A DNA stretch of 64,000 nt, taken from the NCBI GenBank assembly GCA_020891255.1, contig BQFW01000007.1, positions 2,790,001-2,854,000 on the forward strand, given 5' to 3'. Shown in pieces: positions 1 through 35,240 of the stretch. Numbering within the stretch: the stretch's first letter is position 1; each line of letters starts with the position of its first letter. The position numbers were made by a program, and so were the translations under genes. The stretch comes from Entomortierella parvispora E1425. Lineage: Eukaryota; Fungi; Mortierellomycota. The notes beneath the pieces were generated by a model. The model saw only the letters and a list, made by a program, of their open reading frames with translations, searched no databases and was not told the origin of the DNA.

Positions 1-1501
1 ATGAAGACAGGCCTAGTGAGATAGAAGCTCCAGACAACCATGATCCATTATGGCGGAAACACAAGCGATGTATCGTGAGAAATACCCATTGCAGTCAATT
101 GACGTATGATAATTCTTGATGCTTCGGCACTGGACTTTCATGACGCCCACGCCAACAGTGGAGGATTGGAGGATACTGTGAGCGCCAACCCCGAACTCCC
201 AAAGTGAGGTGATCATCGTACCTGCTGTGCTTCCCCGTTGTATCCTCGGCGGCCTATCGATATCAACGGTTGGGAAGGGTAGGTGAAGATCCCCTCGTGT
301 TTCCGTAGGATCGAGTGTGTGTCCGTAGTTACTACCCGGTGATCCTACGCTACAAATATCGGGGGCTGGTTGTTCATCCGACCTGTACCGTACATATTGT
401 TAGTCGATCCACTGAAATGACATGCGATTTGGGGCGACCACCCAGTCTGGAGTCGCAAAATCGTGTGACAGAAGGTCCATCGTGTTGTCCTTGGATCGTA
501 TGAAAGCTGCTGTGATCTTGGCTCCTGTCGCCAAAGAATGGTACTCCCAGAAGGGACTTGCCAGGTCCATTTGGAGGAGGATGAACGTGTGCCCCATATT
601 TCGTCTACGTAGGGCAGGGTGGTTGTCGATCCCAACCATCTTGCCCCTCCCTTTGGCCTTGATGTCCAGAGACTAGATCGTTCTCAAGGCTATTTGCAGT
701 TCCAGACAACTGACAGATCGGTGCTTTCCCTTTGTCGACAGCTGTCCTGATAAGGTGTTGGCCGTCGGAACAGTGTACCCAGCCCATGTCGCTCCCATCC
801 TTGAAAACGTACTATTGTAGAAGTGGAGGCCGCTAAGAGCAGTCCTTGAAGTGGCTACACCACACAGTCCACTTCTACTGATGGGGTCACACTAGGCTTT
901 CCTGAGAGCGAGAACGGTGTCCTTGAAGACAAGAAGGACCGGATCTGTAAGCGTGTCAGAGCGACCAAACAAGGAGGTTAGTTGTTGCTGGGGGACTGGG
1001 TTGGGAATCCACCAGTCTCTCGGCAAAGGTCTCGTACCTTGTCATTGACGAGTGACAGCATCATCTTGTGAGTGTTGGTGTCGAAGCTGAGGCACCCGAC
1101 GACCTGATTGGACTTTGACTCGGGTTATTAGAGTGGGAACAGGACATTAGTTCAGGCTCACAAGTCTCGCCCAAGGACGTGTTGGACAGTGGGCACAGGC
1201 CAGCAAGCTTGAAAGTCCGGTCCGAAATTGTCGTAATGTCAACAGGTGCCAGGCGAGGATCTGGGCCATCATCCTCATCCGATCCTTTAAAAGACGCGCT
1301 AACACACGGATTTGGGGACTTGGCAAAAGAACATTCCGTTGTGGCTAGAGCTCTGGAGCCAAGATGACCAAGGCACGAGAAGACACAAAAGTTGGAGGCC
1401 AGTGTAAAGAGAGTCGATCTGATCTCAGACTGGATTGGTGGCGTGCAGACGAGGAAACAGGAGACGGAGACTCAAGTTGTGCAGGAATGGAATGCATGAG
1501 A

Positions 1502-1589
1502 GGGACAAGGACGCATGTGAGGGGACAAGGACGCATGTGAGGGGACAAGGACGCATGTGAGGGACAAGGACGCATGTGAGGGACAAGGA
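1502..1589 (+). repeat. 19-20 bp minisatellite (G)GGGACAAGGACGCATGTGA, 4 full copies plus a partial; mirrored at ~5321-5408, variant at ~34465-34535
   Basis: Read directly from the sequence. Confidence 0.92.
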
Positions 1590-2605
1590 TGAGAAGAACA
1601 AGAATGCATGAGAAGGACAATGAACAATGAGGGGCGACATGCAAGTGCAGACAAGAGACAAAAGGGATGCCAACGATGGTCCTGGGGTGGAGTGGAGGCC
1701 GGGAGGGAGAAGGGGCCACACACACGAAAAAGGGGAAGCTCGCCTTGCAAAAAAACACAAAAACGTGTCTTGGGTGCTTACCGGCGTCCCGGCAGCTTTT
1801 GGCGTTGCGCCCGCTGATCACGCAGGCCTGGCTGATACAGCCTCCCCCATCCAACCGCAATCCCTACGGCCCAATAGGACACTCCATACCATTCTATGTC
1901 TCCTCTTATGTATTTATAGGCGTATTCTGCGGCCAAAAGACATTTGCGGTACCAGGGTGGAATTTGGTAAAATGATTTCAATCGAGGTGCAAAAACAGTC
2001 AAAAAGTCAAAAAAAAAGCATGGAGCTGGTGGCTTGGGGCAATGCTGCGAGCGCGTGCGCGTGTGTGTGGCGCGTGCGTGCGTTCGGGGAAATCGCAGGG
2101 TCGCATGGCCTGAGCATCGTTTGACCAATCATCCATTCACCAGAACAGGAACAGCTTCTCATTCGACCGACAGGACAATGTGTCATCGCTCAGACCAGAC
2201 ATGGCACCCGGGGCAGCTCTGACCACGTATCCATGCGACCGGAGCAAATGGCCAGCGAGTGAGCGAGCAACATTCATCCACCTGATGCCTTGGTTTTGAG
2301 AGGTCCCATTCTGCGACATTATGGCATGGAGTCGACTCAGTGAGGCCCACGGTCTCTTATCATATCATACTACAAGTTGATCAAGGCGAGTTTGCCCACT
2401 CGTAGCCAACATGTCCATGGTTGTTCATAAACAGGAATTGGAGGCAAGTCAGTACAGGGACCACTCTTCAGGACAAGGACCGCTCTTGGAGGTGCACTGT
2501 GATCTGACTCTGGATCCACGGAACCTCTCGCTAATTCAGAAATGAATTCAAAAAACACGCTGGCCATGCCAGAAACCAGCTCAACAGAAACTACCCACGA
2601 TCACA

Positions 2606-2794
2606 GTGCATGATCTGACCTGGAACGCCCCTGTCAAAAACAGGCTCTACCCGGCGGATTATGGTTCAATAGGTTCAATGGGCAGTGAACGTCGGTGGCG
2701 CATGGATCAGCCCGAGCACAAGGTGGACAAACGAGTTCAACATTGCCTCAAGGTCATGCTCCGTCAACGCAACACCTCGGATCTTATCCAGTAA
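2606..2794 (+). pseudogene. 3' end of unknown decayed gene 'B' (mirror copy 4114-4302 on minus strand)
   Basis: Frame WNAPVKNRLYPADYG...WRMDQPEHKVDKRVQHCLKVMLRQRNTSDLIQ* is conserved, with the same stop position, in the paralogue at 33331-33520 (-). The upstream part is broken by stops and frameshifts. Confidence 0.55.
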
Positions 2795-3231
2795 CGACTG
2801 CCCGATTCCTGATATTCGTCAATATCGTCTTTGCATTCATCGACGGGTGCATTTTCCATGATAATTTGCTTGGGTTTCTGCCATGTGGGACGTGTGTCCA
2901 ATCAGTCGTGAAATCTTGTCGTGGGAGAAAGAGCACGGATACCGTTGGACTTGACAGCCACACTGCTCGACCATTGAACAGGGCCGCTCCACCTCCTGTA
3001 ACATGCGGACAGCTGCAACAGAGCACTGGATGAAAAATTCATTCAACGCACTCTGCCCTCATTGGGGGCACTCGCTTGATACCACACTGTCTGAGTTTTT
3101 ACCCCTTTATTCCACCATATCTCCATAGCGGTTAACATCATTGCAAGAACGAGGACAGTAACAGCACCGTCGCCATTCAAGGCAGACGAGCTTGCCCTGC
3201 TCCATCAGATCAACAGCTTCCTCATCCCAGC

Positions 3232-3405
3232 ATGCCAGAAGAATCTCCATCACTAAGCGAACTACTCGTGCGACGAAAAATATAAAAAGAACAATGAAAA
3301 CGACAACGAGAGCGAGAGATGGCGGCGAGAGAAAAGGAGAGTGAGAACCGGCGGTTCGAGGAAATCCTCTGTGGACTGAGACAATGGCCTCATCAAGGAC
3401 AATAG
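3232..3405 (+). pseudogene. Degenerate copy of charged small-ORF family A
   Basis: MPEESPSLSELLVRRKI*KEQ*KRQREREMAAREKESENRRFEEILCGLRQWPHQGQ*; two in-frame stops at 3283 and 3295. Confidence 0.65.
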
Positions 3406-4108
3406 CAATGGACCATACTAAATAAAACCCTGTTTTTTTTCTCTTCCTTGTTTCCCTAGTGCTGTTCTGCTTCTTGAAAACTCGGCTTTAAGTGCAGATC
3501 CAGATCTCTTACAGATTCCCACGTCATTGGCCATTATCCCTTTCCCTTCTTCTTGCCTTGCTCGTGCACTGTTCCCGTTTCTTCCTTTTTATACTGCAAT
3601 GTCCGTCAACACCCTCTCAAAGCTGCCTTTTGTTCTAGCCGCTTAATTATACAAATCGGAGAAAGGACCTTCTTCCTTTTGACATCAACTGAAGAGATAG
3701 GTGGTAGCACAAGGAGACAGAATGAGGGCACTCAGAAAATCACCATTTTTTTAATTCGTCTGCTCTCTCCTTCCCTCTCTTCTCTTCTTTTGGCTTTGCA
3801 TCCCTGGCCACGAGATTTCCGAGTTAGCAATGCACGAGATGTGGGAAGAGGAGGACGATTCAAAGTTAGACTCTGAGCAAGTTATATCCATATCGTTGAA
3901 CTTGCTACTGTGAGTGCCGTCTGCCCTCTTTACATTTCCGTTCCACTATTTTCTCTCCTCGGATCTGCGTCAAGAGAGAACTGAGGTGGTCCACAGAATA
4001 AGCACGCTTTAATAAAGGCCAGGGGGCGACAGCCGGCCATTATAGACCCAATGAAATTGAAGTGTCGTTGGATGCAGAGTCGATACTGATGAAGGAAAGG
4101 AGCCAAGT

Positions 4109-6691
4109 AGTCGTTACTGGATAAGATCCGAGGTGTTGCGTTGACGGAGCATGACCTTGAGGCAATGTTGAACTCGTTTGTCCACCTTGTGCTCGGGCTG
4201 ATCCATGCGCCACCGACGTTCACTGCCCATTGAACCTATTGAACCATAATCCGCCGGGTAGAGCCTGTTTTTGACAGGGGCGTTCCAGGTCAGATCATGC
4301 ACTGTGATCGTGGGTAGTTTCTGTTGAGCTGGTTTCTGGCATGGCCAGCGTGTTTTTTGAATTCATTTCTGAATTAGCGAGAGGTTCCGTGGATCCAGAG
4401 TCAGATCACAGTGCACCTCCAAGAGCGGTCCTTGTCCTGAAGAGTGGTCCCTGTACTGACTTGCCTCCAATTCCTGTTTATGAACAACCATGGACATGTT
4501 GGCTACGAGTGGGCAAACTCGCCTTGATCAACTTGTAGTATGATATGATAAGAGACCGTGGGCCTCACTGAGTCGACTCCATGCCATAATGTCGCAGAAT
4601 GGGACCTCTCAAAACCAAGGCATCAGGTGGATGAATGTTGCTCGCTCACTCGCTGGCCATTTGCTCCGGTCGCATGGATGCATTGGTCAGAGCTGCCCCG
4701 GGTGCCATGTCTGGTCTGAGCGATGACACATTGTCCTGTCGGTCGAATGAGAAGCTGTTCCTGTTCTGGTGAATGGATGATTGGTCAAACGATGCTCAGG
4801 CCATGCGACCCTGCGATTTCCCCGAACGCACGCACGCGCCACACACACGCGCACGCGCTCGCAGCATTGCCCCAAGCCACCAGCTCCATGCTTTTTTTTT
4901 GACTTTTTGACTGTTTTTGCACCTCGATTGAAATCATTTTACCAAATTCCACCCTGGTACCGCAAATGTCTTTTGGCCGCAGAATACGCCTATAAATACA
5001 TAAGAGGAGACATAGAATGGTATGGAGTGTCCTATTGGGCCGTAGGGATTGCGGTTGGATGGGGGAGGCTGTATCAGCCAGGCCTGCGTGATCAGCGGGC
5101 GCAACGCCAAAAGCTGCCGGGACGCCGGTAAGCACCCAAGACACGTTTTTGTGTTTTTTTTGCAAGGCGAGCTTCCCCTTTTTCGTGTGTGTGGCCCCTT
5201 CTCCCTCCCGGCCTCCACTCCACCCCAGGACCATCGTTGGCATCCCTTTTGTCTCTTGTCTGCACTTGCATGTCGCCCCTCATTGTTCATTGTCCTTCTC
5301 ATGCATTCTTGTTCTTCTCATCCTTGTCCCTCACATGCGTCCTTGTCCCTCACATGCGTCCTTGTCCCCTCACATGCGTCCTTGTCCCCTCACATGCGTC
5401 CTTGTCCCTCTCATGCATTCCATTCCTGCACAACTTGAGTCTCCGTCTCCTGTTTCCTCGTCTGCACGCCACCAATCCAGTCTGAGATCAGATCGACTCT
5501 CTTTACACTGGCCTCCAACTTTTGTGTCTTCTCGTGCCTTGGTCATCTTGGCTCCAGAGCTCTAGCCACAACGGAATGTTCTTTTGCCAAGTCCCCAAAT
5601 CCGTGTGTTAGCGCGTCTTTTAAAGGATCGGATGAGGATGATGGCCCAGATCCTCGCCTGGCACCTGTTGACATTACGACAATTTCGGACCGGACTTTCA
5701 AGCTTGCTGGCCTGTGCCCACTGTCCAACACGTCCTTGGGCGAGACTTGTGAGCCTGAACTAATGTCCTGTTCCCACTCTAATAACCCGAGTCAAAGTCC
5801 AATCAGGTCGTCGGGTGCCTCAGCTTCGACACCAACACTCACAAGATGATGCTGTCACTCGTCAATGACAAGGTACGAGACCTTTGCCGAGAGACTGGTG
5901 GATTCCCAACCCAGTCCCCCAGCAACAACTAACCTCCTTGTTTGGTCGCTCTGACACGCTTACAGATCCGGTCCTTCTTGTCTTCAAGGACACCGTTCTC
6001 GCTCTCAGGAAAGCCTAGTGTGACCCCATCAGTAGAAGTGGACTGTGTGGTGTAGCCACTTCAAGGACTGCTCTTAGCGGCCTCCACTTCTACAATAGTA
6101 CGTTTTCAAGGATGGGAGCGACATGGGCTGGGTACACTGTTCCGACGGCCAACACCTTATCAGGACAGCTGTCGACAAAGGGAAAGCACCGATCTGTCAG
6201 TTGTCTGGAACTGCAAATAGCCTTGAGAACGATCTAGTCTCTGGACATCAAGGCCAAAGGGAGGGGCAAGATGGTTGGGATCGACAACCACCCTGCCCTA
6301 CGTAGACGAAATATGGGGCACACGTTCATCCTCCTCCAAATGGACCTGGCAAGTCCCTTCTGGGAGTACCATTCTTTGGCGACAGGAGCCAAGATCACAG
6401 CAGCTTTCATACGATCCAAGGACAACACGATGGACCTTCTGTCACACGATTTTGCGACTCCAGACTGGGTGGTCGCCCCAAATCGCATGTCATTTCAGTG
6501 GATCGACTAACAATATGTACGGTACAGGTCGGATGAACAACCAGCCCCCGATATTTGTAGCGTAGGATCACCGGGTAGTAACTACGGACACACACTCGAT
6601 CCTACGGAAACACGAGGGGATCTTCACCTACCCTTCCCAACCGTTGATATCGATAGGCCGCCGAAGATACAACGGGGAAGCACAGCAGGTA
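4109..6691. repeat. Right arm of the ~2.58 kb inverted repeat
   Basis: Reverse complement of 219-2799. Three differences seen: 245/6665 substitution, A7 vs T8 (1749/5154), and CGT vs GCAT (2226/4680). Confidence 0.97.
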
Positions 6692-7327
6692 TGTTGGTCG
6701 ACTCGGCATGAGAGTCCAAGTCTTGGAATTCAACTCTCCCACCGGATCGCCAACAATGCTGGTCAATTTCATTGAGTCTATCATGCCCAACTGCGGACGG
6801 AGGAGCAGAGGAGCAGAGACAACCAGAAAGACAGAGAGGGCAGACGAGCGGAGGGGCAGACGAGCACAGAAGACAGAGGGGCAGACAAGTAATAAACTGG
6901 CTTTATTAAGTAGAGTACGGAAATGATCCAGGGCGATGGATGCGCTCCGCCGGATGGGATGCTCGCGTTGAACGGCGCGGTCTTGTCTTTGCCACCACTC
7001 AGCGTCGGCCCCCCTGGTATCGCTCTTACTGCTGCCGACGCCTTCGCTTCTCTCTTTGTCTTCACTGTTGTTGCAGTGGCAGCGTCAAGAGCTATGTCTA
7101 CGCCAATAGAGAGGGTCACTTGCCACTGCCAGAATCAAGAGGCTCCCTTGGGGCTCTAATCAAGGCAGCCAACCCATCCTCTACGCTTGATTAGTCTACG
7201 TTTTCCAGAATCGCTTGACCGTGTCTTCCACAATCGACACAATCCACTTAAACATCCACGCCAAACTCCTGGACTCTTTGATAAGGAGTTCCTCTGCTGA
7301 CATTGTTGATTGTAGTAAGGCCAATTC

Positions 7328-7358
<31 letters not shown>

Positions 7359-7880
7359 TGGCGGCGATCTGAACACCCATCACGCAAAAACATCGATCCA
7401 CTCTGTCCAGAGACTCAGACTATGACCTAATGCCATTTCTCTTTTGATGCTCGTACCATGCCAGAGCTCTCCTTCCTCGCTCTGATTCATCTTTTGCCAT
7501 TCCATTCCATTCATATTCATAGAAGATGCAGTTTATATTGATGTCGAAAGGGAGGGGTCCTTTTCTTCAATTTATATGAGTAAAATGGCTACAACAAAAA
7601 ATAGCTTCGACGTGGGTATTGACGAATACGGGATGGCGTCCACACACGCGACCTTGGAAACCATCACAAGAGACAGATGATATGGTGATGGGAGAAAGGA
7701 AGAAAAGGAAACAGAGCCCCATGGCCAAATATCTACAAGAAGAAAGAGAAGGTGAAGAAACAATGACGCGGGAGCCTGCAACGGATCCTAAGCTTCGAAC
7801 AGCACTATCAACAAGAAACGGAACAGGAATAGGGAGATGTGGAAGGCGGTCGAGCAAACATTTTGTTGAAGTGGTTGTTG

Positions 7881-8072
7881 CTATTTCTTGGGCCACTGAC
7901 CCAACCCTCGCAGGATGGCCTCCTCGAGGCGCTGGTTCTCCTCGTCCTCCTCCCATTCTACCCTCCGTCGCTGTCGTCGTTGTTCTCGTTCTTGTTGTCG
8001 ACGCGATCTTCGCAGCTCCCACAACTCCCTCAGCTCTTGGGGGGTGAGGTCTTTGGGCTGTTGAGAAGACAT
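7881..8072 (-). CDS. Intact 63-aa Arg/Glu/Gln-rich small protein, family A (unknown function)
   Basis: ATG-started ORF MSSQQPKDLTPQELRELWELRRSRRQQEREQRRQRRRVEWEEDEENQRLEEAILRGLGQWPKK. The same frame and an MSS start recur in paralogues. Confidence 0.55.
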   Translation of the reverse strand: MSSQQPKDLTPQELRELWELRRSRRQQEREQRRQRRRVEWEEDEENQRLEEAILRGLGQWPKK

Positions 8073-8305
8073 TCCGTTGTTGATTTGAGAAGAACGGCGA
8101 AGGACAAGCTCGCCTTAAATGGCGTGGTGTCTTCTTGCTGTCATAGAAACAGCTGTTCTTGTTTTTGCCGCTATCGACTTGCAGGCTCTCCTCGTCCTCC
8201 TCCCTTTTGAGGGTGCTTTTGAAAAGGACGATGTGTACATGCGAACTGGAGATCTATTGTACAAGACCAAGGACCAGTACTGGTACTTTGCCGATCGTCC
8301 CTCTC

Positions 8306-8418
8306 TCACTGTCCTCGTGCTTCTCGTTCAGCTTGTCGTCGCAATCTTCGCTGCTCGCGCAGCTTCAGCAGTTCTTGGCGGATGAGCTCTAGATTCTTGG
8401 GGGTAGCTCTGACGACAT
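8306..8418 (-). pseudogene. Degenerate family-A small ORF
   Basis: MSSEL start, then a frameshifted ELIRQELLKLREQRRLRRQAEREARGQ*; preceded by the family motif at 8466-8516. Confidence 0.55.
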
Positions 8419-8998
8419 GGTACTGGATACCGGATATAGGGGTCGTCAAAAGCAAGGCGTAGGGAAAGCTCGCCCTTGAAGGGAACGATTTCGGTTCTGC
8501 CCTCGTTCTTGCAATGATGGTGGCTTCTGTGGAGACGTGGTAGCAAAAAAAAAAAAAAAAAAAGATATCAGGCAGTGTGGCGTCAAGGGCGCACGTTTAT
8601 CAGGCGGTGACCACCGAAGGGGGCATGATGTATATGAGTCAGCAAGCAAAATGGATACCAGGCAGTGCCACTGATGGGGACAGAGTGTCAATTGACGCAA
8701 TGAATAGATCCATCCAGCGCTCTGTTGCAGAGCTCTAGATGATGTTTCACTTTATTGTCCGACGGCGCCTTCCACTCCACTACCATATTGAACAGAGCCA
8801 CATAGTCTTTTTTGCTTGGCCAGGTTATACCCCAGCTGACACAATCTAATTGAACGTCCACGTTAATCCCAGACTCTTTTATAGGAAGGAGCCAGGTAGG
8901 CCTCACCCCTCATGACAATAAACAAGAGATGCAATGATGTTGAGAAGGAGCACTCTTTATACTGATACTGGAAGGTAAAACAAGATGGGTAAATGGTA

Positions 8999-11410
8999 TC
9001 ATGGAGAATGGGTCTGGCCAGCTGCCATGGCAGGCAACGAGGAGGAGGAAGAGCTCGTATGCATACGCCCTTCATGAACGTTGATTCCAGAGGCTAAGGT
9101 ATCACTACCCCCCGTGACAGCAGTTTTGGAGGCCTTTGGATCCTCTAGATTGCTATACTGGACAAGATCTGGATCCTCCTCATCCACCAAGATGTTATAA
9201 AGACCTGACTGGCTCCCGGAGGGGGACAACGCCATGCTATCCAACCTTGAAGGATGACTGCCCTGTTGTCTCGCATGGTGATGTCGATGACCGATCCGGG
9301 GCCCATGTCGCCTATGCGACCGATGCGTGCCAAATACACGATCCAGAACCCGGTCCAAGCATCGAAATTTGCCCGTGTAATAGAGCCATTGACAGAAGAT
9401 GGAAAGATCAAACATCAATGTTCCCGACGATCCTAGCACATATGGCACAGCCTCCCGGAGAAATTTCTGACGCGTTGTCGGATCTACGGCCTCGCGCGAG
9501 TTGAGGATCGAGAGAGTATACGAAAGATTACCCATGGCCGCCCAAAAAAACATAAGGATCGACAATCCCTGGACAGACTTGCGTTTGTACTGGGAAAGAA
9601 AAGAGGTGGTTCGGTGGCAAAGAGTCAGCACAGCAAACAACAAAACAACAAAACAACAAAGAGGCCAAAAAAAAAAAAAAATGGGGACACATACATTTTT
9701 CCAGAGCTGAGGCATCCGACTGGATAAATAAAAGACTGTGCAGACCCATGCAAAAATCCTTCCTAATTGCACAATATTCACATCTGTAGGCTCGTCCGTG
9801 ATCATCTCATCCTGCGAAAGATCTGCTCTTGCAAAAACACGGCCTTGGACAGGGAAGGACCCTGTCAATGATCCTGATCCAAAATGTGCCTCCAAGGTCG
9901 AGTCTGAAGGCCAGGTTTGACGCAGTGTGAAGAGCATTACCCCAAAGAGCACGATAGATGTGCTATCGAAGGACAAAAAGATAGAGAATCGGAAAATGGT
10001 GAGACGGATGTCGCGGCTATTTCCCGTACAACAGTATCTTTCACGAAATAAAGAGGTATACCTTCTCCTATGTGAAATATCAGAAGCGGTCGTCGCCCGT
10101 CTCGTCCTGGGCCTGTGCATCAATGGTGATAGGTTTTCAGCCTGCTCCAAATCACTGCCCAGTTCTGCGCCTCCATCCAGAACTAAATCATGATGCAAAG
10201 GAGGAATTGCCGTCGCTGTCGTCGAAGCAGCAGGCGCTGCCGTTACTGTTGCCGAAGTCACTCTTCTTGAATGGCGGGGTCGACCCGACAGTGAGGGTGC
10301 GGGATGAAGCGAATGGCGGCGGTGATCTGTTTCCGAAATCTCGGGCAAGTCCCCGACCATGATATCGGGCATGTCGTGCTGAACTAGTCGTTTATAACGG
10401 TCCCGACGGGAGTAGTATATCCACTGACCAAAAAGGATGATGTCTGCGATACAAAAGTAAATGGCGAGATACATCTATTGGGGGTAAGAGAAGGCGAACA
10501 GCGTGATCAATCAGTTGTTGAGAGCGACATAAGAGGCATTGTAGTTCCCCAGCTAGAAGGCAAGGAATCCTGATGGCATCCCTACCTGAAATGGGAGTTG
10601 GTGGGTCAAAATACATCCGATCAGATTGCTAATGTCGCCTGGAGGGGCAAGAAGCAAAAGGTTCAGACCAGAAAGGCAGGTTAGAACATCTGGTACTTTG
10701 AGAGGACATATTAGACCCTGCCAAGAAACCTCCTCCTACCCAGCAGCCAATTGATCAGAAATGGTAGTGAGAGGGACTCTATATCCATACGATACGGAAG
10801 AAGCAACAATTTACATTAGTATAATAAGGCCATGGGTCCCCAAGGGTGCATTGATCCTCCTCTGGAATCAAACCCACCTGCTGAGCCCAGCTTGAAATTT
10901 TCAATGATCTGGCTACAAGGCAAAAACAAAAAAAGGTCCTGTCAGCCATCGTGTGTGTAACGCACTCCCTTTCGTCACCTCTGTTCCTGTCCTCCTTACG
11001 GTATCTGAGCATTCAACCAGCAGAGAATTGATACATATCCTAGAGAATATTGGCCAAAGGAAGAAAGAGAGCGGGTCAGGATTCAACCTTGTTTGTTGCT
11101 GCAGCGAAACAAAAAAAAAAAGAAGTCCGCTCGAAGAAGAAAAAAGAGAACCTGGACCGATTCGTCAGTCAAGGAGAAAAGAATGAAGGGATGCCTTACC
11201 AAGGAGCAGACTCATGGCCTGCTGCTGTGTCGTTACACATTCATTAAACAGAGTCTAATGGGTTCAGAAAGAGAAAAGCACATTCATTTACGGTCAGCTG
11301 TCTTGACAAGGTAAAATGAGACCAAGAAAGAGGCGAACAAATGAGGTCCTTGTTCATGGGAGAAAAGCTACCTTGATCCAGCCAATGCATTCCGCAGGTG
11401 ACCCTTCCAT
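8999..11410 (-). CDS. PQ-loop vacuolar/lysosomal amino-acid transporter (Ypq1/PQLC2 family), multi-exon
   Basis: Spliced exons give MEGSPAECIGWIK|TLFNECVTTQQQAMSLLLG|YVSILCWLNAQIP|QIIENFKLGSA|ESLSLPFLINWLLG|DISNLIGCILTHQLPFQ|MYLAIYFC. A second loop follows: FYLSSRMPQLWKN|YKRKSVQGLSILMFFWAAMGNLSY. Confidence 0.93.
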
Positions 11411-31340: not shown

Positions 31341-31543
31341 GACCCCGCTCGTTCTTATAGCGCGAGATTGACAACCGAACATGCGTCACTTGAGCCACAC
31401 CACTCAATATTCAACTCGCCACCATTTAACGTATCAGTTCAGTGTCATTGTGCCTGCCCATGCAAGAACGAGGGCAGAAGCAAAGTCGTCCCATTCAAGG
31501 GCGAGCTTGACTTACGCCTTCGTATCGACAACTATCCAGTACT

Positions 31544-31738
31544 ATGTCGTCAGAATAAACCCCCAATCATGAGCTCGTTCCTCAAGAACTGCTAGAGCTG
31601 CGCGAATTGAGACTGCGACGACAAACAGAACGAGAACAACGACGACAACAGCAAGAGGGGGAGGCAAGGGAGGATAAGGACGATAAGGACGAGAACCGGC
31701 GGCTCGAAGAGGCGATCCTCCGAGGGCTGGGCCAATGA
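31544..31738 (+). pseudogene. Family-A small ORF with a premature stop
   Basis: MSSE*TPNHELVPQELLELRELRLRRQTEREQRRQQQEGEAREDKDDKDENRRLEEAILRGLGQ*. Confidence 0.65.
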
Positions 31739-31871
31739 TGCCAGCAGCGAGAGCGACACCGGCCGGTCGATAGAGGCAAAGACAAGAATAGTAGCTGTTT
31801 CCATGACAGCAACACCCCTCGCCATTTAAGGCGAGCCTGCCCTACGCCTTCTTATCAACATCAATAATAGA

Positions 31872-32071
31872 ACGTCTTATCAACAGCCCCTGAAAGACCA
31901 AGCAGCCCCCGCCCCCAAGAGCTGCAGGTGCGCGACATGCAAAAATTGCGAAGACAACAAGAACGAAAACAACGACGACGGCGACGAAGGGAGGCATGGT
32001 AGGAGGAAAGAGAGAACCGACGCCTCGAGGAGGAGATCCTCCGGGAGTTGGGCGGGTGGCCCAAGCAGTAG
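31872..32071 (+). pseudogene. Family-A small ORF with ATG>ACG, a frameshift and an internal stop
   Basis: PQELQVRDMQKLRRQQERKQRRRRRREAW*EERENRRLEEEILRELGGWPKQ*. Confidence 0.62.
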
Positions 32072-33330
32072 CAACAACCACTTCAACAAAATGTTTGCTC
32101 GACCGCCTTCCATACCTTCCTATTGCTGTTCCGTTTCTTGTTGATAGTGCTGTTTGAAGCCTAGGATCCGTTGCAGGCTCCCGCGTCATTGTTTCTTCAC
32201 CTTCTCTTTCTTCTTGTAGATAATAGGCCATGGGGCTCTGTTTCCTTTTCCTCCTTTCTCCCATCACCATATCATCTGTCTCTTGTGATGGTTTCCAAGG
32301 TCGCGTGTGTGGACGCCATCCCGTGTTCATCAATACCCAGGTCAAAGCTACTTCCTCCCTTTCGACATCAACATAAACTGCATCTATTAAGAATATAAAT
32401 GGAGTGGCAAGAGATGAACCAGAGCGGGAAAGGAGAGCTCTGGCATGGTACGAGCATCAAAAGAGAAATGGCATTGGGTCATAGTCCGATTCTCTGGGCA
32501 GAGTGGATCGTTGTTTTTGCAAGATGGGTGGTAGCACAGTGAACGATGGTGCTCAGATCGCTGCCACCTTTTTTTTTTTTTTTTTTTTTTTGAATTCGCC
32601 CTACTAGAACCAACAATGTCAGTAGAGGAACTCCTTACCAAAGAGTCCAGGGAGTTGGCGTGGATGTTCAAGTGGATTGTCTCGATTGGGGGAAAACACG
32701 GTCAAGCGATTCTAGAAAACGCAATCGGCTAATCAAGCGTAGTCAAGGCCTAACTAGAATTGCGTAGAGGATGGGTTGGCTGCCTCGACTAGAGCCCCGA
32801 GGGAGCCTCTTGATTCTGGCAGTGGCAAGTGACCCTGTCTCTATTGGCATAGACATAGCTCTTGATGCTCCCACTGCAACAACACTGAAGACAAAGAGAG
32901 AAGCGAAGGCGTCGGTAGCAGCAAGAACGATACCGGGAGAGACGACGCTGAGTAGTGGCAAAGACAAGACCACGCCGTTCAACGCGAGCATTCCATCCGG
33001 CGGAGCACATCCATCGCCTCGGATCATTTCCGTACTCTACTTAAAGCCCGGTTTATTAATATAACTTGTCTGCCCTCTGTCTCCCCCCTCTGCCCGCCTG
33101 CCCTCTCTGTCCTTCTGCCTTCTCTTTGCTCCTCTGTTCCTCTGTTTTCTCTCTCTGCTGTAGATTTCTGATAACATTGTCCGAATCTTCGCATCCGAGC
33201 CAAGAAGAAACTGAGGTAGTCCACAGAATAGGGGCCAGGGGGCGACAGTTGGCCATGATAGACCCAATGAAATTGAAGCGTCGTTGGATGTAGAGTCGAT
33301 GCTGATGAAGGAAAGGAGCCAAGTAGTCGT

Positions 33331-35240
33331 TTACTGGATAAGATTCAAGGAGTTAAGTTCACGGAGCTTGACCTTGAGGCATTGTTGAACTCGTTTGTCC
33401 ACCTTGTCCTCAGGCTGATCCACGCGCCACCAACTTTCACTGCTCACTCAACCATAATCCGCCGGGTAGAGCTTTTCTTTGAGAGGGATGTTCCAGGGCA
33501 GACTGGGCACTCTGATCGCGTGTGGCTGCTGTTGAGTTCGATTTTCTGCACAACCGGCGTGTTTTTGAGGTCCCATGGATAGACAGAGATGTGGATCTAG
33601 GGTCAGATCGGAGTGCACCTCCAAGAGCGGCCGTTGTCCAGAGTTGTCTCCAATCCCTTTTTATGAACAACCAAGGTCATTTCATGGGTGTTAGCAAAAT
33701 TCGCCCTGTTCGACCTGGCAGTTGATAAGGAACTGAAGCAGAACAGGACCTCTCGGACCAACACACAGGTCGATGTATGTGGGCTCACTCACTCACTCGC
33801 TGGCCATTTGCCCGGTCGCATGGATGCAAAGGTCAGACCTGTTCCAGGTGCCATGTCTGGTCTGAGCAATGACCATTGTCCTGTTCGGCCGAATGAAAAG
33901 TTGTTCATGTTCTGGTGAATGGATGATTGGTCAAATCATGCTCAGACCATGCGACCCTGCGATTTCCCCCAACGCACGCACGCGCCACACACTCGCGCAC
34001 GCGCACGCAGCATTGCCCCAAGCCACCAGCTCCATGCTTTTTTTTGACTTTTTGACTGTTTTTGCACCTCGATTGAAATCATTTTACCAAATTCCACCCT
34101 GGTACCGCAAATGTCTTTTGGCCGCAGAATACGCCTATAAATACATAAGAGGAGACATAGAAAGGTAACAGATGGTGAAAAAGGACTCGGTGGGGGAGGC
34201 TGTATCAGCCAGGCCTGAGTGATCAGCGGGCGCAACATCGATGTCTACCGGGACGCTGGTAGTCTGCCTTTCTTTTGTTTTGCACGGCAAGGGTCCCTTT
34301 TTCGTGTTTGTGGCCCCTGCGGAGTGGAGTGGAGTGGAGTGGAGGCCGGGAGGGACCAGGCTCAAGGACCATCCATCGTTGGCATCCCTCCTGTCTCTTG
34401 TCTGCACTTGCATGACGTTCCTCATTGTTCATTGTCCTTCTCATGCATTCTTGCTCTTCTCATCCTTGTCCCTCTCATGCGTCCTTGTCCCTCTCATGCG
34501 TCCTTGTCCCTCACATGCATCCCTGTCCCTCTCATGCATTCCATTCTTGCACAACTTGAGTCTCCGTCAACTGTTGCCTTATCTGCACGCCACCAATCCG
34601 GCCCGCCCTGCCAAGAGCGACTCCCAAAACACGGACCTGCGACTTTCGCGCATTTTTGTGCCTCGATCGTCTTGATGCAAGTCCCCAAATCTACGTCTTG
34701 GCTCTTTTTTCAAAGAAGAGGACGAGAAGATGAAGGCCCGGATCATCGCCTGGCACCCGACAACAGCATGACTTCCTTCAGAACGGACTTCCAAGTGACT
34801 GGTCTGTGCCCATGTACATCGGGTCCTCGAGCGAAACTTGAGAGCCTGAAAACCAACACGGGTCATCGGGCGCGCTTCGTTATCAAAAGTCGGGCGCAGG
34901 ACTCTTCAAGGACCAGGTATGTGGCCTTTGCTCAGACAACAGCAGTACCTTTTGTCCCTCCGACGCGTTTACAAACTCAGTCTTTCTTGTCTTCAAGGAC
35001 AACGTCCTCACTTTCGGGAAAGTCTAGAGTGACCCAATCAAGAGGTGCAATCGATCTTTGCAGTGGTGGTACAACCGCATCAAGAACTCGGCAGTTTTCA
35101 TCTCTCCAACAGCCGGAGATGCTTCTTACCACATCATCTTTTCCCTTGCCATGCTTTCCAACCTCAAGACCGCCCCACTCGGTGATACTAGGCACCTGAC
35201 ATACATCATATCCCCATCAGATCAGTGCTTGATACCACAC
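33331..35240 (-). pseudogene. Decayed gene B paralogue
   Basis: Ends in LPWNIPLKEKLYPADYG*VSSESWWRVDQPEDKVDKRVQQCLKVKLRELNSLNLIQ*. Contains VTLDFPESEDVVLEDKKD, matching VTLGFPESENGVLEDKKD at ~885-940. Confidence 0.5.

What the first reader, a model, noticed from the sequence alone, without database searches (positions are those of the whole stretch)
219..6691. 2.58 kb near-perfect inverted repeat around a 1.3 kb spacer
Seen: arms 219-2799 and 4109-6691 are reverse complements. Only three differences were noticed on spot checks (one substitution, one homopolymer indel, one CGT/GCAT swap), and no transposase or short TIR/TSD was found. At the 4680 site the right arm matches the distant paralogue (33.8 kb), so the left arm looks derived, which argues for a real duplication. 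Established: long inverted repeats give fold-back dsRNA that feeds fungal RNAi and can form unstable hairpins. Inference: a read-through transcript could act as a natural hairpin that silences gene family B in trans.
Basis: partly seen in the sequence, partly recalled or inferred. Interest (0 to 1): 0.75.

Follow-up and report, generated by a model that had tools for sequence, protein, structure and literature searches.

The report
Mirror-image pair of small-RNA genes
The near-perfect 2.6-kb inverted repeat is real, but rather than an evident RNA-silencing hairpin it is a mirror-image pair of identical copies of an undescribed small-RNA gene, each driven by the same upstream promoter this fungus uses for U6 and signal-recognition-particle (SRP) RNA, and probably kept identical by copy-correction between the two arms.

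Summary
Window 219-2799 and 4109-6691 are reverse complements at 99.8% identity, differing at three sites, around a 1,309-bp spacer.

The arms carry no protein-coding signal. There are no long ORFs and no Pfam hits. Mismatches to paralogues show no codon periodicity, and 77-88% of indels are not multiples of three.

Each arm does hold an apparently intact small-RNA gene:
- A bipartite upstream element plus a TATA box sits at the same distances as in front of both U6 genes and the 7SL gene of this genome.
- It is followed by a 131-nt structured RNA that ends in a T-run.
- Rfam has no match. The family has six genes in the genome, three of them in this window.
- The two arm genes point outward and are same-sense, so they make no double-stranded RNA.

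Weak in-register homology continues past both arm boundaries. The spacer is a decayed copy of the segment 'A' that lies outside the right arm. I therefore read this as an old inverted duplication whose arms are kept identical by gene conversion.

The hairpin-RNAi idea is neither supported nor excluded. The RNAi genes exist, but no promoter that would read through both arms was found.

The organism is Entomortierella parvispora.

The parts
219..2799 (.). Left arm, near-identical core of the inverted repeat
   Evidence: 99.8% reverse-complementary to 4109-6691
4109..6691 (.). Right arm, near-identical core
   Evidence: colinear with the paralogue unit together with the spacer end
195..218 (.). 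Diverged outer edge of the left arm (pairs with 6692-6715)
   Evidence: 14/24 in-register matches, P about 8e-4
2800..2844 (.). Diverged inner edge of the left arm (pairs with 4064-4108); remnant of segment s'
   Evidence: 30/45 in-register matches, P about 1e-8
1759..1889 (-). Predicted 131-nt small-RNA gene, left copy, transcribed outward
   Evidence: Starts 22 bp beyond the TATA, as U6 does, and ends in T5-GTG-T7. The covariance model R1 built on the family hits it at E 6e-30. No Rfam family matches
1890..1984 (-). Upstream promoter of the left copy: TATA 1911-1918, 12-mer block 1944-1955, 20-mer block 1965-1984
   Evidence: The same blocks at the same spacing precede both U6 genes and the 7SL gene
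5020..5150 (+). Predicted 131-nt small-RNA gene, right copy, identical sequence, transcribed outward
4925..5019 (+). Upstream promoter of the right copy: 20-mer 4925-4944, 12-mer 4954-4965, TATA 4991-4998
2845..3141 (.). Spacer part with no relatives elsewhere in the genome
3142..3955 (.). Spacer part that is a decayed, shortened inverted copy of segment A
   Evidence: 69-77% matches to A (8461-8549, 7538-7624), to the paralogue at 31461-31737, and to the contig-5 (C5) and contig-2 (C2) units, all in colinear order
3956..4108 (.). Segment s, contiguous with the right arm as in the paralogue unit
   Evidence: One blastn alignment, 3956-5759 to 33186-34850, runs across the arm boundary
6745..6793 (.). 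Fragment of s in the opposite orientation, abutting segment A
   Evidence: 86% to paralogue 33246-33287
6797..8513 (.). Segment A, non-coding partner of B and duplicated with it
   Evidence: 80% to 33145-31461; no Pfam hits
34165..34282 (+). Paralogous small-RNA gene 30 kb away; its promoter block at 34038-34162 is 100% identical to the arms

Best explanation
This is a palindromic pair of identical genes for an orphan small RNA, here called 'B RNA', most likely transcribed by RNA polymerase III.

Each arm holds a gene-external promoter. It has a TATA box at -29 to -22, an invariant 12-mer at -66 to -55 and an invariant 20-mer at -95 to -76. Downstream lies a 131-nt structured RNA ending in a T-run. 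The two genes point away from the spacer.

The palindrome arose from an old inverted duplication of a roughly 5-kb non-coding unit (A - s - upstream region - promoter - RNA - downstream region) into its own s segment. The co-duplicated A copy, now the spacer, has decayed. The 2.58-kb arm cores have been kept at 99.8% identity by arm-to-arm gene conversion. The last 25-45 bp of each arm lie too close to the end of homology to be converted and have drifted to about 60-67% identity.

What is shown: the repeat, the shared promoter architecture, the terminators, the six-member family, the non-coding mode of evolution, the edge homology and the decayed A copy. What is inferred: Pol III transcription, any function of the RNA, and gene conversion as the homogenising process.
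For: The repeat and its three differences.

Promoter:
- The 20-mer occurs 13 times exactly in 38.9 Mb, against 0 for the control.
- Rfam places U6 and 7SL immediately beyond the TATA of such copies.
- The genome has only two U6 genes, and both carry the promoter.
- SNAPC3 is present.
- In B copies that are otherwise about 74% identical, the promoter block is 88-100% conserved, and the substitutions fall outside the invariant blocks.

RNA:
- A T-run lies 112-175 nt downstream in all six copies.
- The conserved 3' domain is paired in 91% of cells. Five pairs show changes on both sides. Slid controls reach only 29-54%.
- The whole-genome covariance-model search finds exactly six genes.

Non-coding evolution.

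Old age plus homogenisation:
- In-register edge homology.
- Spacer 3142-3955, s and the right arm are together colinear with the paralogue unit, while A and the spacer copy of A are only about 72-76% alike in fragments.
- A fragment of s abuts A.
Against: - No RNA data were examined, so neither expression nor the polymerase is shown.
- Covariation rests on five sequences. Between 13 and 25 of 500 shuffles reach the observed values.
- The RNA's 5' part differs greatly between copies (13-85 nt), and the C2 copy lacks one hairpin, so some members may be decaying.
- Gene conversion between sequences that had already diverged by about 30% would be very inefficient. The model therefore needs continuous conversion since the duplication, which cannot be shown without a second species or population data.
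- The 100% identity of the promoter block between the arms and the paralogue could partly reflect conversion rather than constraint.
- The assembly is Nanopore-based with Pilon polishing (PMC8759367), so the homopolymer difference may be a sequencing error.
Confidence: 0.6

Rival explanations
1. A recent one-off event created the near-identity. Either a 2.6-kb piece of one arm was copied in inverted orientation by replication template switching or break repair, or a single long conversion tract overwrote an older diverged copy. There is no ongoing concerted evolution.
For: Only three differences in 2.58 kb. The left arm is truncated relative to the family at about 2845, whereas the right arm continues into s and the decayed A copy as the paralogues do. 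The region is rich in local duplications.
Against: A fresh insertion would have no in-register homology beyond its ends, yet 30/45 and 14/24 matches are seen. The leftover s fragment plus A on the far side of the right arm implies that an older unit already sat there. A single conversion across partners about 30% diverged is mechanistically unlikely (established knowledge of homeologous recombination).
Confidence: 0.2
2. This is a natural hairpin-RNA locus. A Pol II transcript reads through arm, spacer and arm and folds into a long double-stranded RNA. Dicer cuts it into small RNAs that act on the B family or on the shared promoter sequence.
For: The geometry fits. Argonaute/Piwi, RdRP and Dicer genes are present. 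The 125-bp promoter block is identical in the paralogue 30 kb away, so some 21-mers would match in trans.
Against: No promoter was found that would drive read-through. The only recognisable promoters point outward and are followed by strong T-run terminators. Only about 7% of arm 21-mers match the closest paralogue and almost none match the other copies. The targets would be non-coding. The roughly 10-kb surroundings contain no recognisable protein gene whose transcript could run in.
Confidence: 0.07
3. This is an assembly artefact: a fold-back chimera or a mis-joined repeat in the Nanopore assembly.
For: The assembly comes from Nanopore reads with short-read polishing (PMC8759367), and palindromic chimeric reads do exist. 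No reads could be inspected here.
Against: The arms differ at three sites. They flank a 1.3-kb spacer that has its own diverged relatives elsewhere. The structure lies about 160 kb inside a 2.95-Mb contig, with different unique flanks on each side. Reported coverage is 409x (PMC8759367). Fold-back chimeras normally have no spacer.
Confidence: 0.04
4. This is a foldback-type or long-terminal-inverted-repeat transposable element.
For: Long inverted arms with a short middle, and diverged relatives of the arm at about eight other places.
Against: There is no transposase or any other domain. No target-site duplication was seen. The other copies are different fragments without shared ends, and none is itself an inverted repeat. 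The arm boundaries do not coincide with the family boundaries, since homology with the paralogues runs through the inner boundary of the right arm.
Confidence: 0.03

Closest known systems
Large palindromes of mammalian sex chromosomes kept over 99% identical by arm-to-arm gene conversion (PMC8600007, PMC8327919)
   Same: Two inverted arms above 99% identical, a unique spacer, a gene copy in each arm, and arm identity far higher than that of material duplicated with them.
   Different: The arms here are 2.6 kb rather than over 8-10 kb. The setting is an autosome-like fungal contig. The cargo is a small-RNA gene, not testis-expressed protein genes. Conversion is inferred from one genome only.
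Gene-external (type 3) RNA polymerase III promoters of U6, 7SK, H1 and MRP genes, with PSE and TATA bound by SNAPc and TBP (review PMC5855946)
   Same: All conserved promoter elements lie upstream: a TATA near -30 and a conserved element further upstream. The same promoter serves U6. A T-run acts as terminator. A SNAPC3 homologue is present.
   Different: The upstream element is bipartite (a 12-mer and a 20-mer separated by exactly 9 variable bases) and reaches to -95. It also drives 7SL. Binding by SNAPc and use by Pol III are not shown. The yeast model fungi use internal A and B blocks instead.
Inverted-repeat hairpin loci that feed RNAi
   Same: Long inverted repeat with a loop-sized spacer, in a genome that has Dicer, Argonaute and RdRP.
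   Different: No read-through promoter is evident. The only recognisable transcription units are short, outward-facing and same-sense.

Membership tests
Palindrome maintained by arm-to-arm gene conversion | Two inverted arms above 99% identical around a unique spacer | tested here: met
   99.8% over 2,581/2,583 bp with a 1,309-bp spacer
Palindrome maintained by arm-to-arm gene conversion | Arms much more alike than their age predicts (orthologous palindrome in another species, or co-duplicated material that has diverged) | tested here: inconclusive
   Arm edges are 58-67% identical in register, and the co-duplicated A copy in the spacer has decayed to 69-77% fragments.
Type 3 (upstream-promoter) Pol III small-RNA gene | TATA box about 25-30 bp upstream of the start | tested here: met
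   TATAAATA at -29 to -22 in the arms, the same as before U6
Type 3 (upstream-promoter) Pol III small-RNA gene | Conserved upstream element shared with the U6 gene | tested here: met
   The 12-mer and 20-mer blocks sit at fixed spacing in both U6 genes, the 7SL gene and all six B genes
Type 3 (upstream-promoter) Pol III small-RNA gene | Run of T as terminator shortly after a short RNA | tested here: met
   T5-GTG-T7/8 at +127 in the arms; T-runs at 112-175 nt in all six copies
Type 3 (upstream-promoter) Pol III small-RNA gene | SNAPc present in the genome | tested here: met
   SNAPC3 (PF12251) at C9:1352678-1353775, 73 bits; other subunits were not searched
Type 3 (upstream-promoter) Pol III small-RNA gene | Transcript made by Pol III | not testable with these tools
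   No RNA or ChIP data were available
Any described RNA family (Rfam 15) | Covariance-model match | tested here: not met
   No match at E<=1 in 1-9000. Only a chance-level hit at E 0.79 in 1720-1900
Hairpin-RNA / inverted-repeat siRNA locus | Transcript spanning both arms | not testable with these tools
   No read-through promoter is recognisable. The arm promoters point outward
Hairpin-RNA / inverted-repeat siRNA locus | RNAi machinery present | tested here: met
   Piwi, RdRP and Dicer_dimer hits
Hairpin-RNA / inverted-repeat siRNA locus | Trans targets with siRNA-length identity | tested here: inconclusive
   185 shared 21-mers with the paralogue, 68 with C5, 56 with C10, and 0-13 elsewhere, centred on the promoter
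Foldback / long-TIR transposon | Transposase, target-site duplication, and copies with shared termini | tested here: not met
   No domains. The other copies are unequal fragments

The most novel reading that the evidence does not exclude
B RNA is a lineage-specific, functional Pol III RNA built like a guide RNA, with a variable 5' segment and a conserved 3' scaffold ending in a hairpin and U-tail. The palindrome would then be a selected device that keeps two error-corrected copies of the commonest variant. Together with the other unassigned genes behind the same promoter, this would reveal a set of unknown Pol III RNAs in early-diverging fungi.
Probability: 0.12. Interest if true: 0.7.

Novelty: new member of a known kind. 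Interest (0 to 1): 0.45.

Why it matters
The result replaces a speculative silencing hairpin with something concrete and testable. The only sequence under visible constraint in the arms is a U6/7SL-type upstream promoter followed by an unknown structured small RNA.

This matters in three ways:
- It defines the gene-external small-RNA promoter of a mortierellalean fungus. That is directly useful for expressing guide RNAs in these oil-producing and plant-associated fungi.
- It flags at least three unassigned RNA genes or families behind that promoter.
- It gives a compact fungal example in which palindrome maintenance by gene conversion could be studied with public reads.

Tried and rejected
- Protein coding in the arms, spacer and A. 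Stop-to-stop ORFs are at most 172 aa and have no Pfam hits. Six-frame tblastn against the paralogues scores all frames alike. There is no codon periodicity, and most indels are not multiples of three. A codon-usage scan trained on nine long ORFs of the window was too weak to discriminate and was dropped.
- My first reading of the conserved core. I took it for a promoter plus leader exon, or a spliced-leader-like RNA, on the plus strand of the left arm. I abandoned this when Rfam placed U6 and 7SL on the other side of the TATA. A villin-headpiece-like motif (E 0.08) and a primer-binding-site reading were also rejected as coincidences.
- tRNA and Rfam scans of the arms found nothing.
- The metagenome scan with the 20-mer gave two hits that lack the rest of the promoter, which is what chance predicts.
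- The 5' 29-mer of the arm RNA has no other match in the genome with up to 3 mismatches.
- B RNA shows no similarity to U6, 7SL or the other RNAs behind the same promoter.
- Papers on Pol III promoters in Mucoromycota or Mortierella: none found in the library.
Full report
**1. Observation**

The repeat finder and blastn show that window 219-2799 is the reverse complement of 4109-6691. Identity is 99.806% over 2,583 columns, with 3 mismatches and 2 gap openings.

A global alignment puts every difference at three sites:
- 245/6665, a substitution.
- 1748/5161, one base in an A-run.
- 2224-2228/4680-4684, a compound change.

At the compound site the right arm agrees with the paralogue in this window and with the contig-5 (C5) copy, so the left arm carries the derived state. 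The spacer is 1,309 bp.

**2. Organism and assembly**

The neighbouring PQ-loop transporter matches an NCBI protein of Entomortierella parvispora. That protein lies on a contig of 2,950,983 bp, which is the length of the contig holding this window.

The published assembly used Nanopore reads at 409x, SMARTdenovo, Nanopolish and Pilon (PMC8759367). A residual homopolymer error could explain the A7/A8 difference.

A fold-back artefact is unlikely for several reasons. The arms differ. The spacer is unique but has diverged relatives elsewhere. The structure lies about 160 kb inside the contig, between different flanks.

**3. The arms are not protein-coding**

- The longest stop-to-stop frame in the arms is 172 aa and of low complexity.
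- Eighteen ORFs from the arms, spacer, segment A and the paralogue give no Pfam hit better than E 0.06.
- The arm has diverged relatives at 67-85% identity: in this window (33186-35040) and on contigs 5, 10, 13, 9 and 2 (C5, C10, C13, C9, C2).
- Mismatches to those relatives are evenly spread over the three codon phases.
- 77-88% of indels are not multiples of three.
- Six-frame comparison scores all frames alike.

'Family B' therefore evolves as non-coding DNA.

**4. What is conserved**

Inside each arm, a 125-bp block (1892-2016; mirror 4893-5017) is 100% identical to the paralogue, although its flanks are only about 74% identical. The same block is 95%, 90% and 88% identical in the C5, C10 and C2 copies. 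A 79-bp core recurs at six further places with unrelated flanks.

A 20-mer within the block occurs 13 times exactly in the 38.9-Mb genome, against none for the reversed control.

I first read the block on the wrong strand. An Rfam scan of the unrelated copies corrected this. Both U6 snRNA genes of the genome, and the 7SL/SRP RNA gene, start 22-31 bp beyond the TATA of such a block, on the other strand.

Read that way, the block is a gene-external promoter:
- TATAAATA at -29 to -22.
- An invariant 12-mer at -66 to -55.
- Nine variable bases.
- An invariant 20-mer at -95 to -76.

A SNAPC3 homologue is present. This matches the type 3 Pol III layout described for animal U6 genes and differs from the internal A/B-block layout of yeast U6 (PMC5855946).

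**5. The gene in the arms**

In both arms the promoter is followed by an identical 131-nt sequence: 1889 to 1759 on the minus strand, and 5020 to 5150 on the plus strand. It ends in T5-GTG-T7 on the left and T8 on the right, so the homopolymer difference lies in the terminator. The predicted folding energy is -55.5 kcal/mol.

The other four B copies also have a T-run, 112-175 nt downstream. All copies share a 3' domain: a closing stem around two hairpins, then a CCGG-GACG-CCGG hairpin and the U-run. The 5' part varies from 13 to 85 nt.

On the five distinct sequences:
- 91% of cells are paired.
- Five pairs change on both sides.
- Partner-slid controls pair only 29-54% of cells.
- 13-25 of 500 shuffles reach the observed values.

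This is suggestive, not conclusive.

A covariance model of the 3' domain finds exactly six genes in the whole genome, three of them in this window. Rfam has no family for this RNA. It shows no similarity to the other RNAs behind the same promoter. Its 5' 29-mer has no other match in the genome.

**6. Consequence for the hairpin idea**

The two arm genes diverge. Each is transcribed from the spacer side toward the outer end, and each ends at a strong terminator. The two RNAs are identical, not complementary.

A hairpin RNA would need a separate transcript running at least 3.9 kb through arm, spacer and arm. I found nothing that would drive one, and the roughly 10 kb around the repeat has no recognisable protein gene.

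Argonaute, RdRP and Dicer genes exist, so the pathway is available. However, only 185 of about 2,560 arm 21-mers occur in the closest paralogue, and far fewer occur elsewhere. They are centred on the promoter.

The idea remains possible but has no support in the sequence.

**7. History of the locus**

The paralogue at 31461-35040 reads, in order: reverse-complemented A, a short segment s, the upstream region, the promoter, the RNA gene and the downstream region.

In the repeat locus, spacer 3142-3955, s (3956-4108) and the right arm are together colinear with that unit. The alignment runs straight across the inner boundary of the right arm. The spacer's copy of A is shortened and only 69-77% identical in fragments.

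On the far side of the right arm lie a fragment of s in the opposite orientation (6745-6793) and a well-preserved A (6797-8513, 80% to the paralogue). The left arm ends in a 45-bp remnant of the first part of s.

The simplest reading is one old unit (left arm, s, A) that was split within s by an inverted full copy of itself, together with 297 bp of unknown origin.

**8. Why the arms are still identical**

Material that was duplicated with the arms has diverged strongly:
- The spacer's copy of A is decayed.
- In register, the 45 bp beyond the inner boundary are 67% identical (30/45, P about 1e-8).
- The 24 bp beyond the outer boundary are 58% identical (14/24, P about 8e-4).

A fresh insertion would leave no such edges.

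The pattern fits continuous arm-to-arm gene conversion that cannot reach the last few tens of bases of homology. This is the process described for mammalian sex-chromosome palindromes (PMC8600007, PMC8327919).

A single recent conversion or template-switch event is the main rival. It would have had to act across partners already about 30% diverged, which is unlikely.

The test that would separate the two models is the orthologous locus in a related species.

**9. Verdict**

The repeat is real. It is best described as a small palindrome that carries two identical copies of an orphan small-RNA gene with a U6-type promoter.

It is a new member of known kinds: a palindrome under concerted evolution, and a type 3 small-RNA gene.

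The more interesting product of the follow-up is the promoter itself and the set of unassigned RNA genes behind it.

Noticed in passing
G000 C11:1773081-1773159, C11:1813743-1813821, C11:1910106-1910184 (loci L051-L053): Three nearly identical genes behind the same U6/7SL-type promoter. Each is predicted to give a roughly 145-nt RNA ending in T9-T13. No Rfam match at E<=5.
   Followed up: partly
G000 C11:1402710-1402784 (L050) and C15:208803-208822 (L056): Two further single-copy genes behind the same promoter. One is predicted at about 200 nt and the other at over 235 nt. Neither was recognised by Rfam, even on short slices. They may be very divergent RNase P or MRP RNAs, or new RNAs.
   Followed up: partly
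G000 C15:178987-179093 (-) and C15:189234-189340 (+); C12 (L054:1121-1418): The genome has only two U6 genes, 10 kb apart in opposite orientation, and a 7SL gene. All three are driven by the same bipartite upstream element plus TATA. The 7SL gene lies about 350 bp upstream of a DAHP-synthase-like ORF.
   Followed up: partly
window 6797-8513 and 31461-33145: Segment A travels with the B gene and is better conserved between the two copies than B is, reaching 94-97% over 7643-7842. It has no ORF with a Pfam hit and no codon periodicity. Fragments of A-like sequence also lie next to the C5 and C2 B genes. Its role is unknown.
   Followed up: partly
window 1494-1589 and 5321-5416: A 20-nt tandem repeat (4.9 copies, 96% matches) lies about 170 bp downstream of each arm's RNA gene.
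   Followed up: no
window about -1700 to 8990 (C7:2788300-2798990): About 10.7 kb without any recognisable protein-coding gene. This is unusually long for this compact genome.
   Followed up: no
G000 C13:2327395-2327936 and C9:452318-452859: Two copies of the far-downstream part of the B unit give identical alignment statistics against the arm. This suggests a recent duplication between contigs 13 and 9.
   Followed up: no
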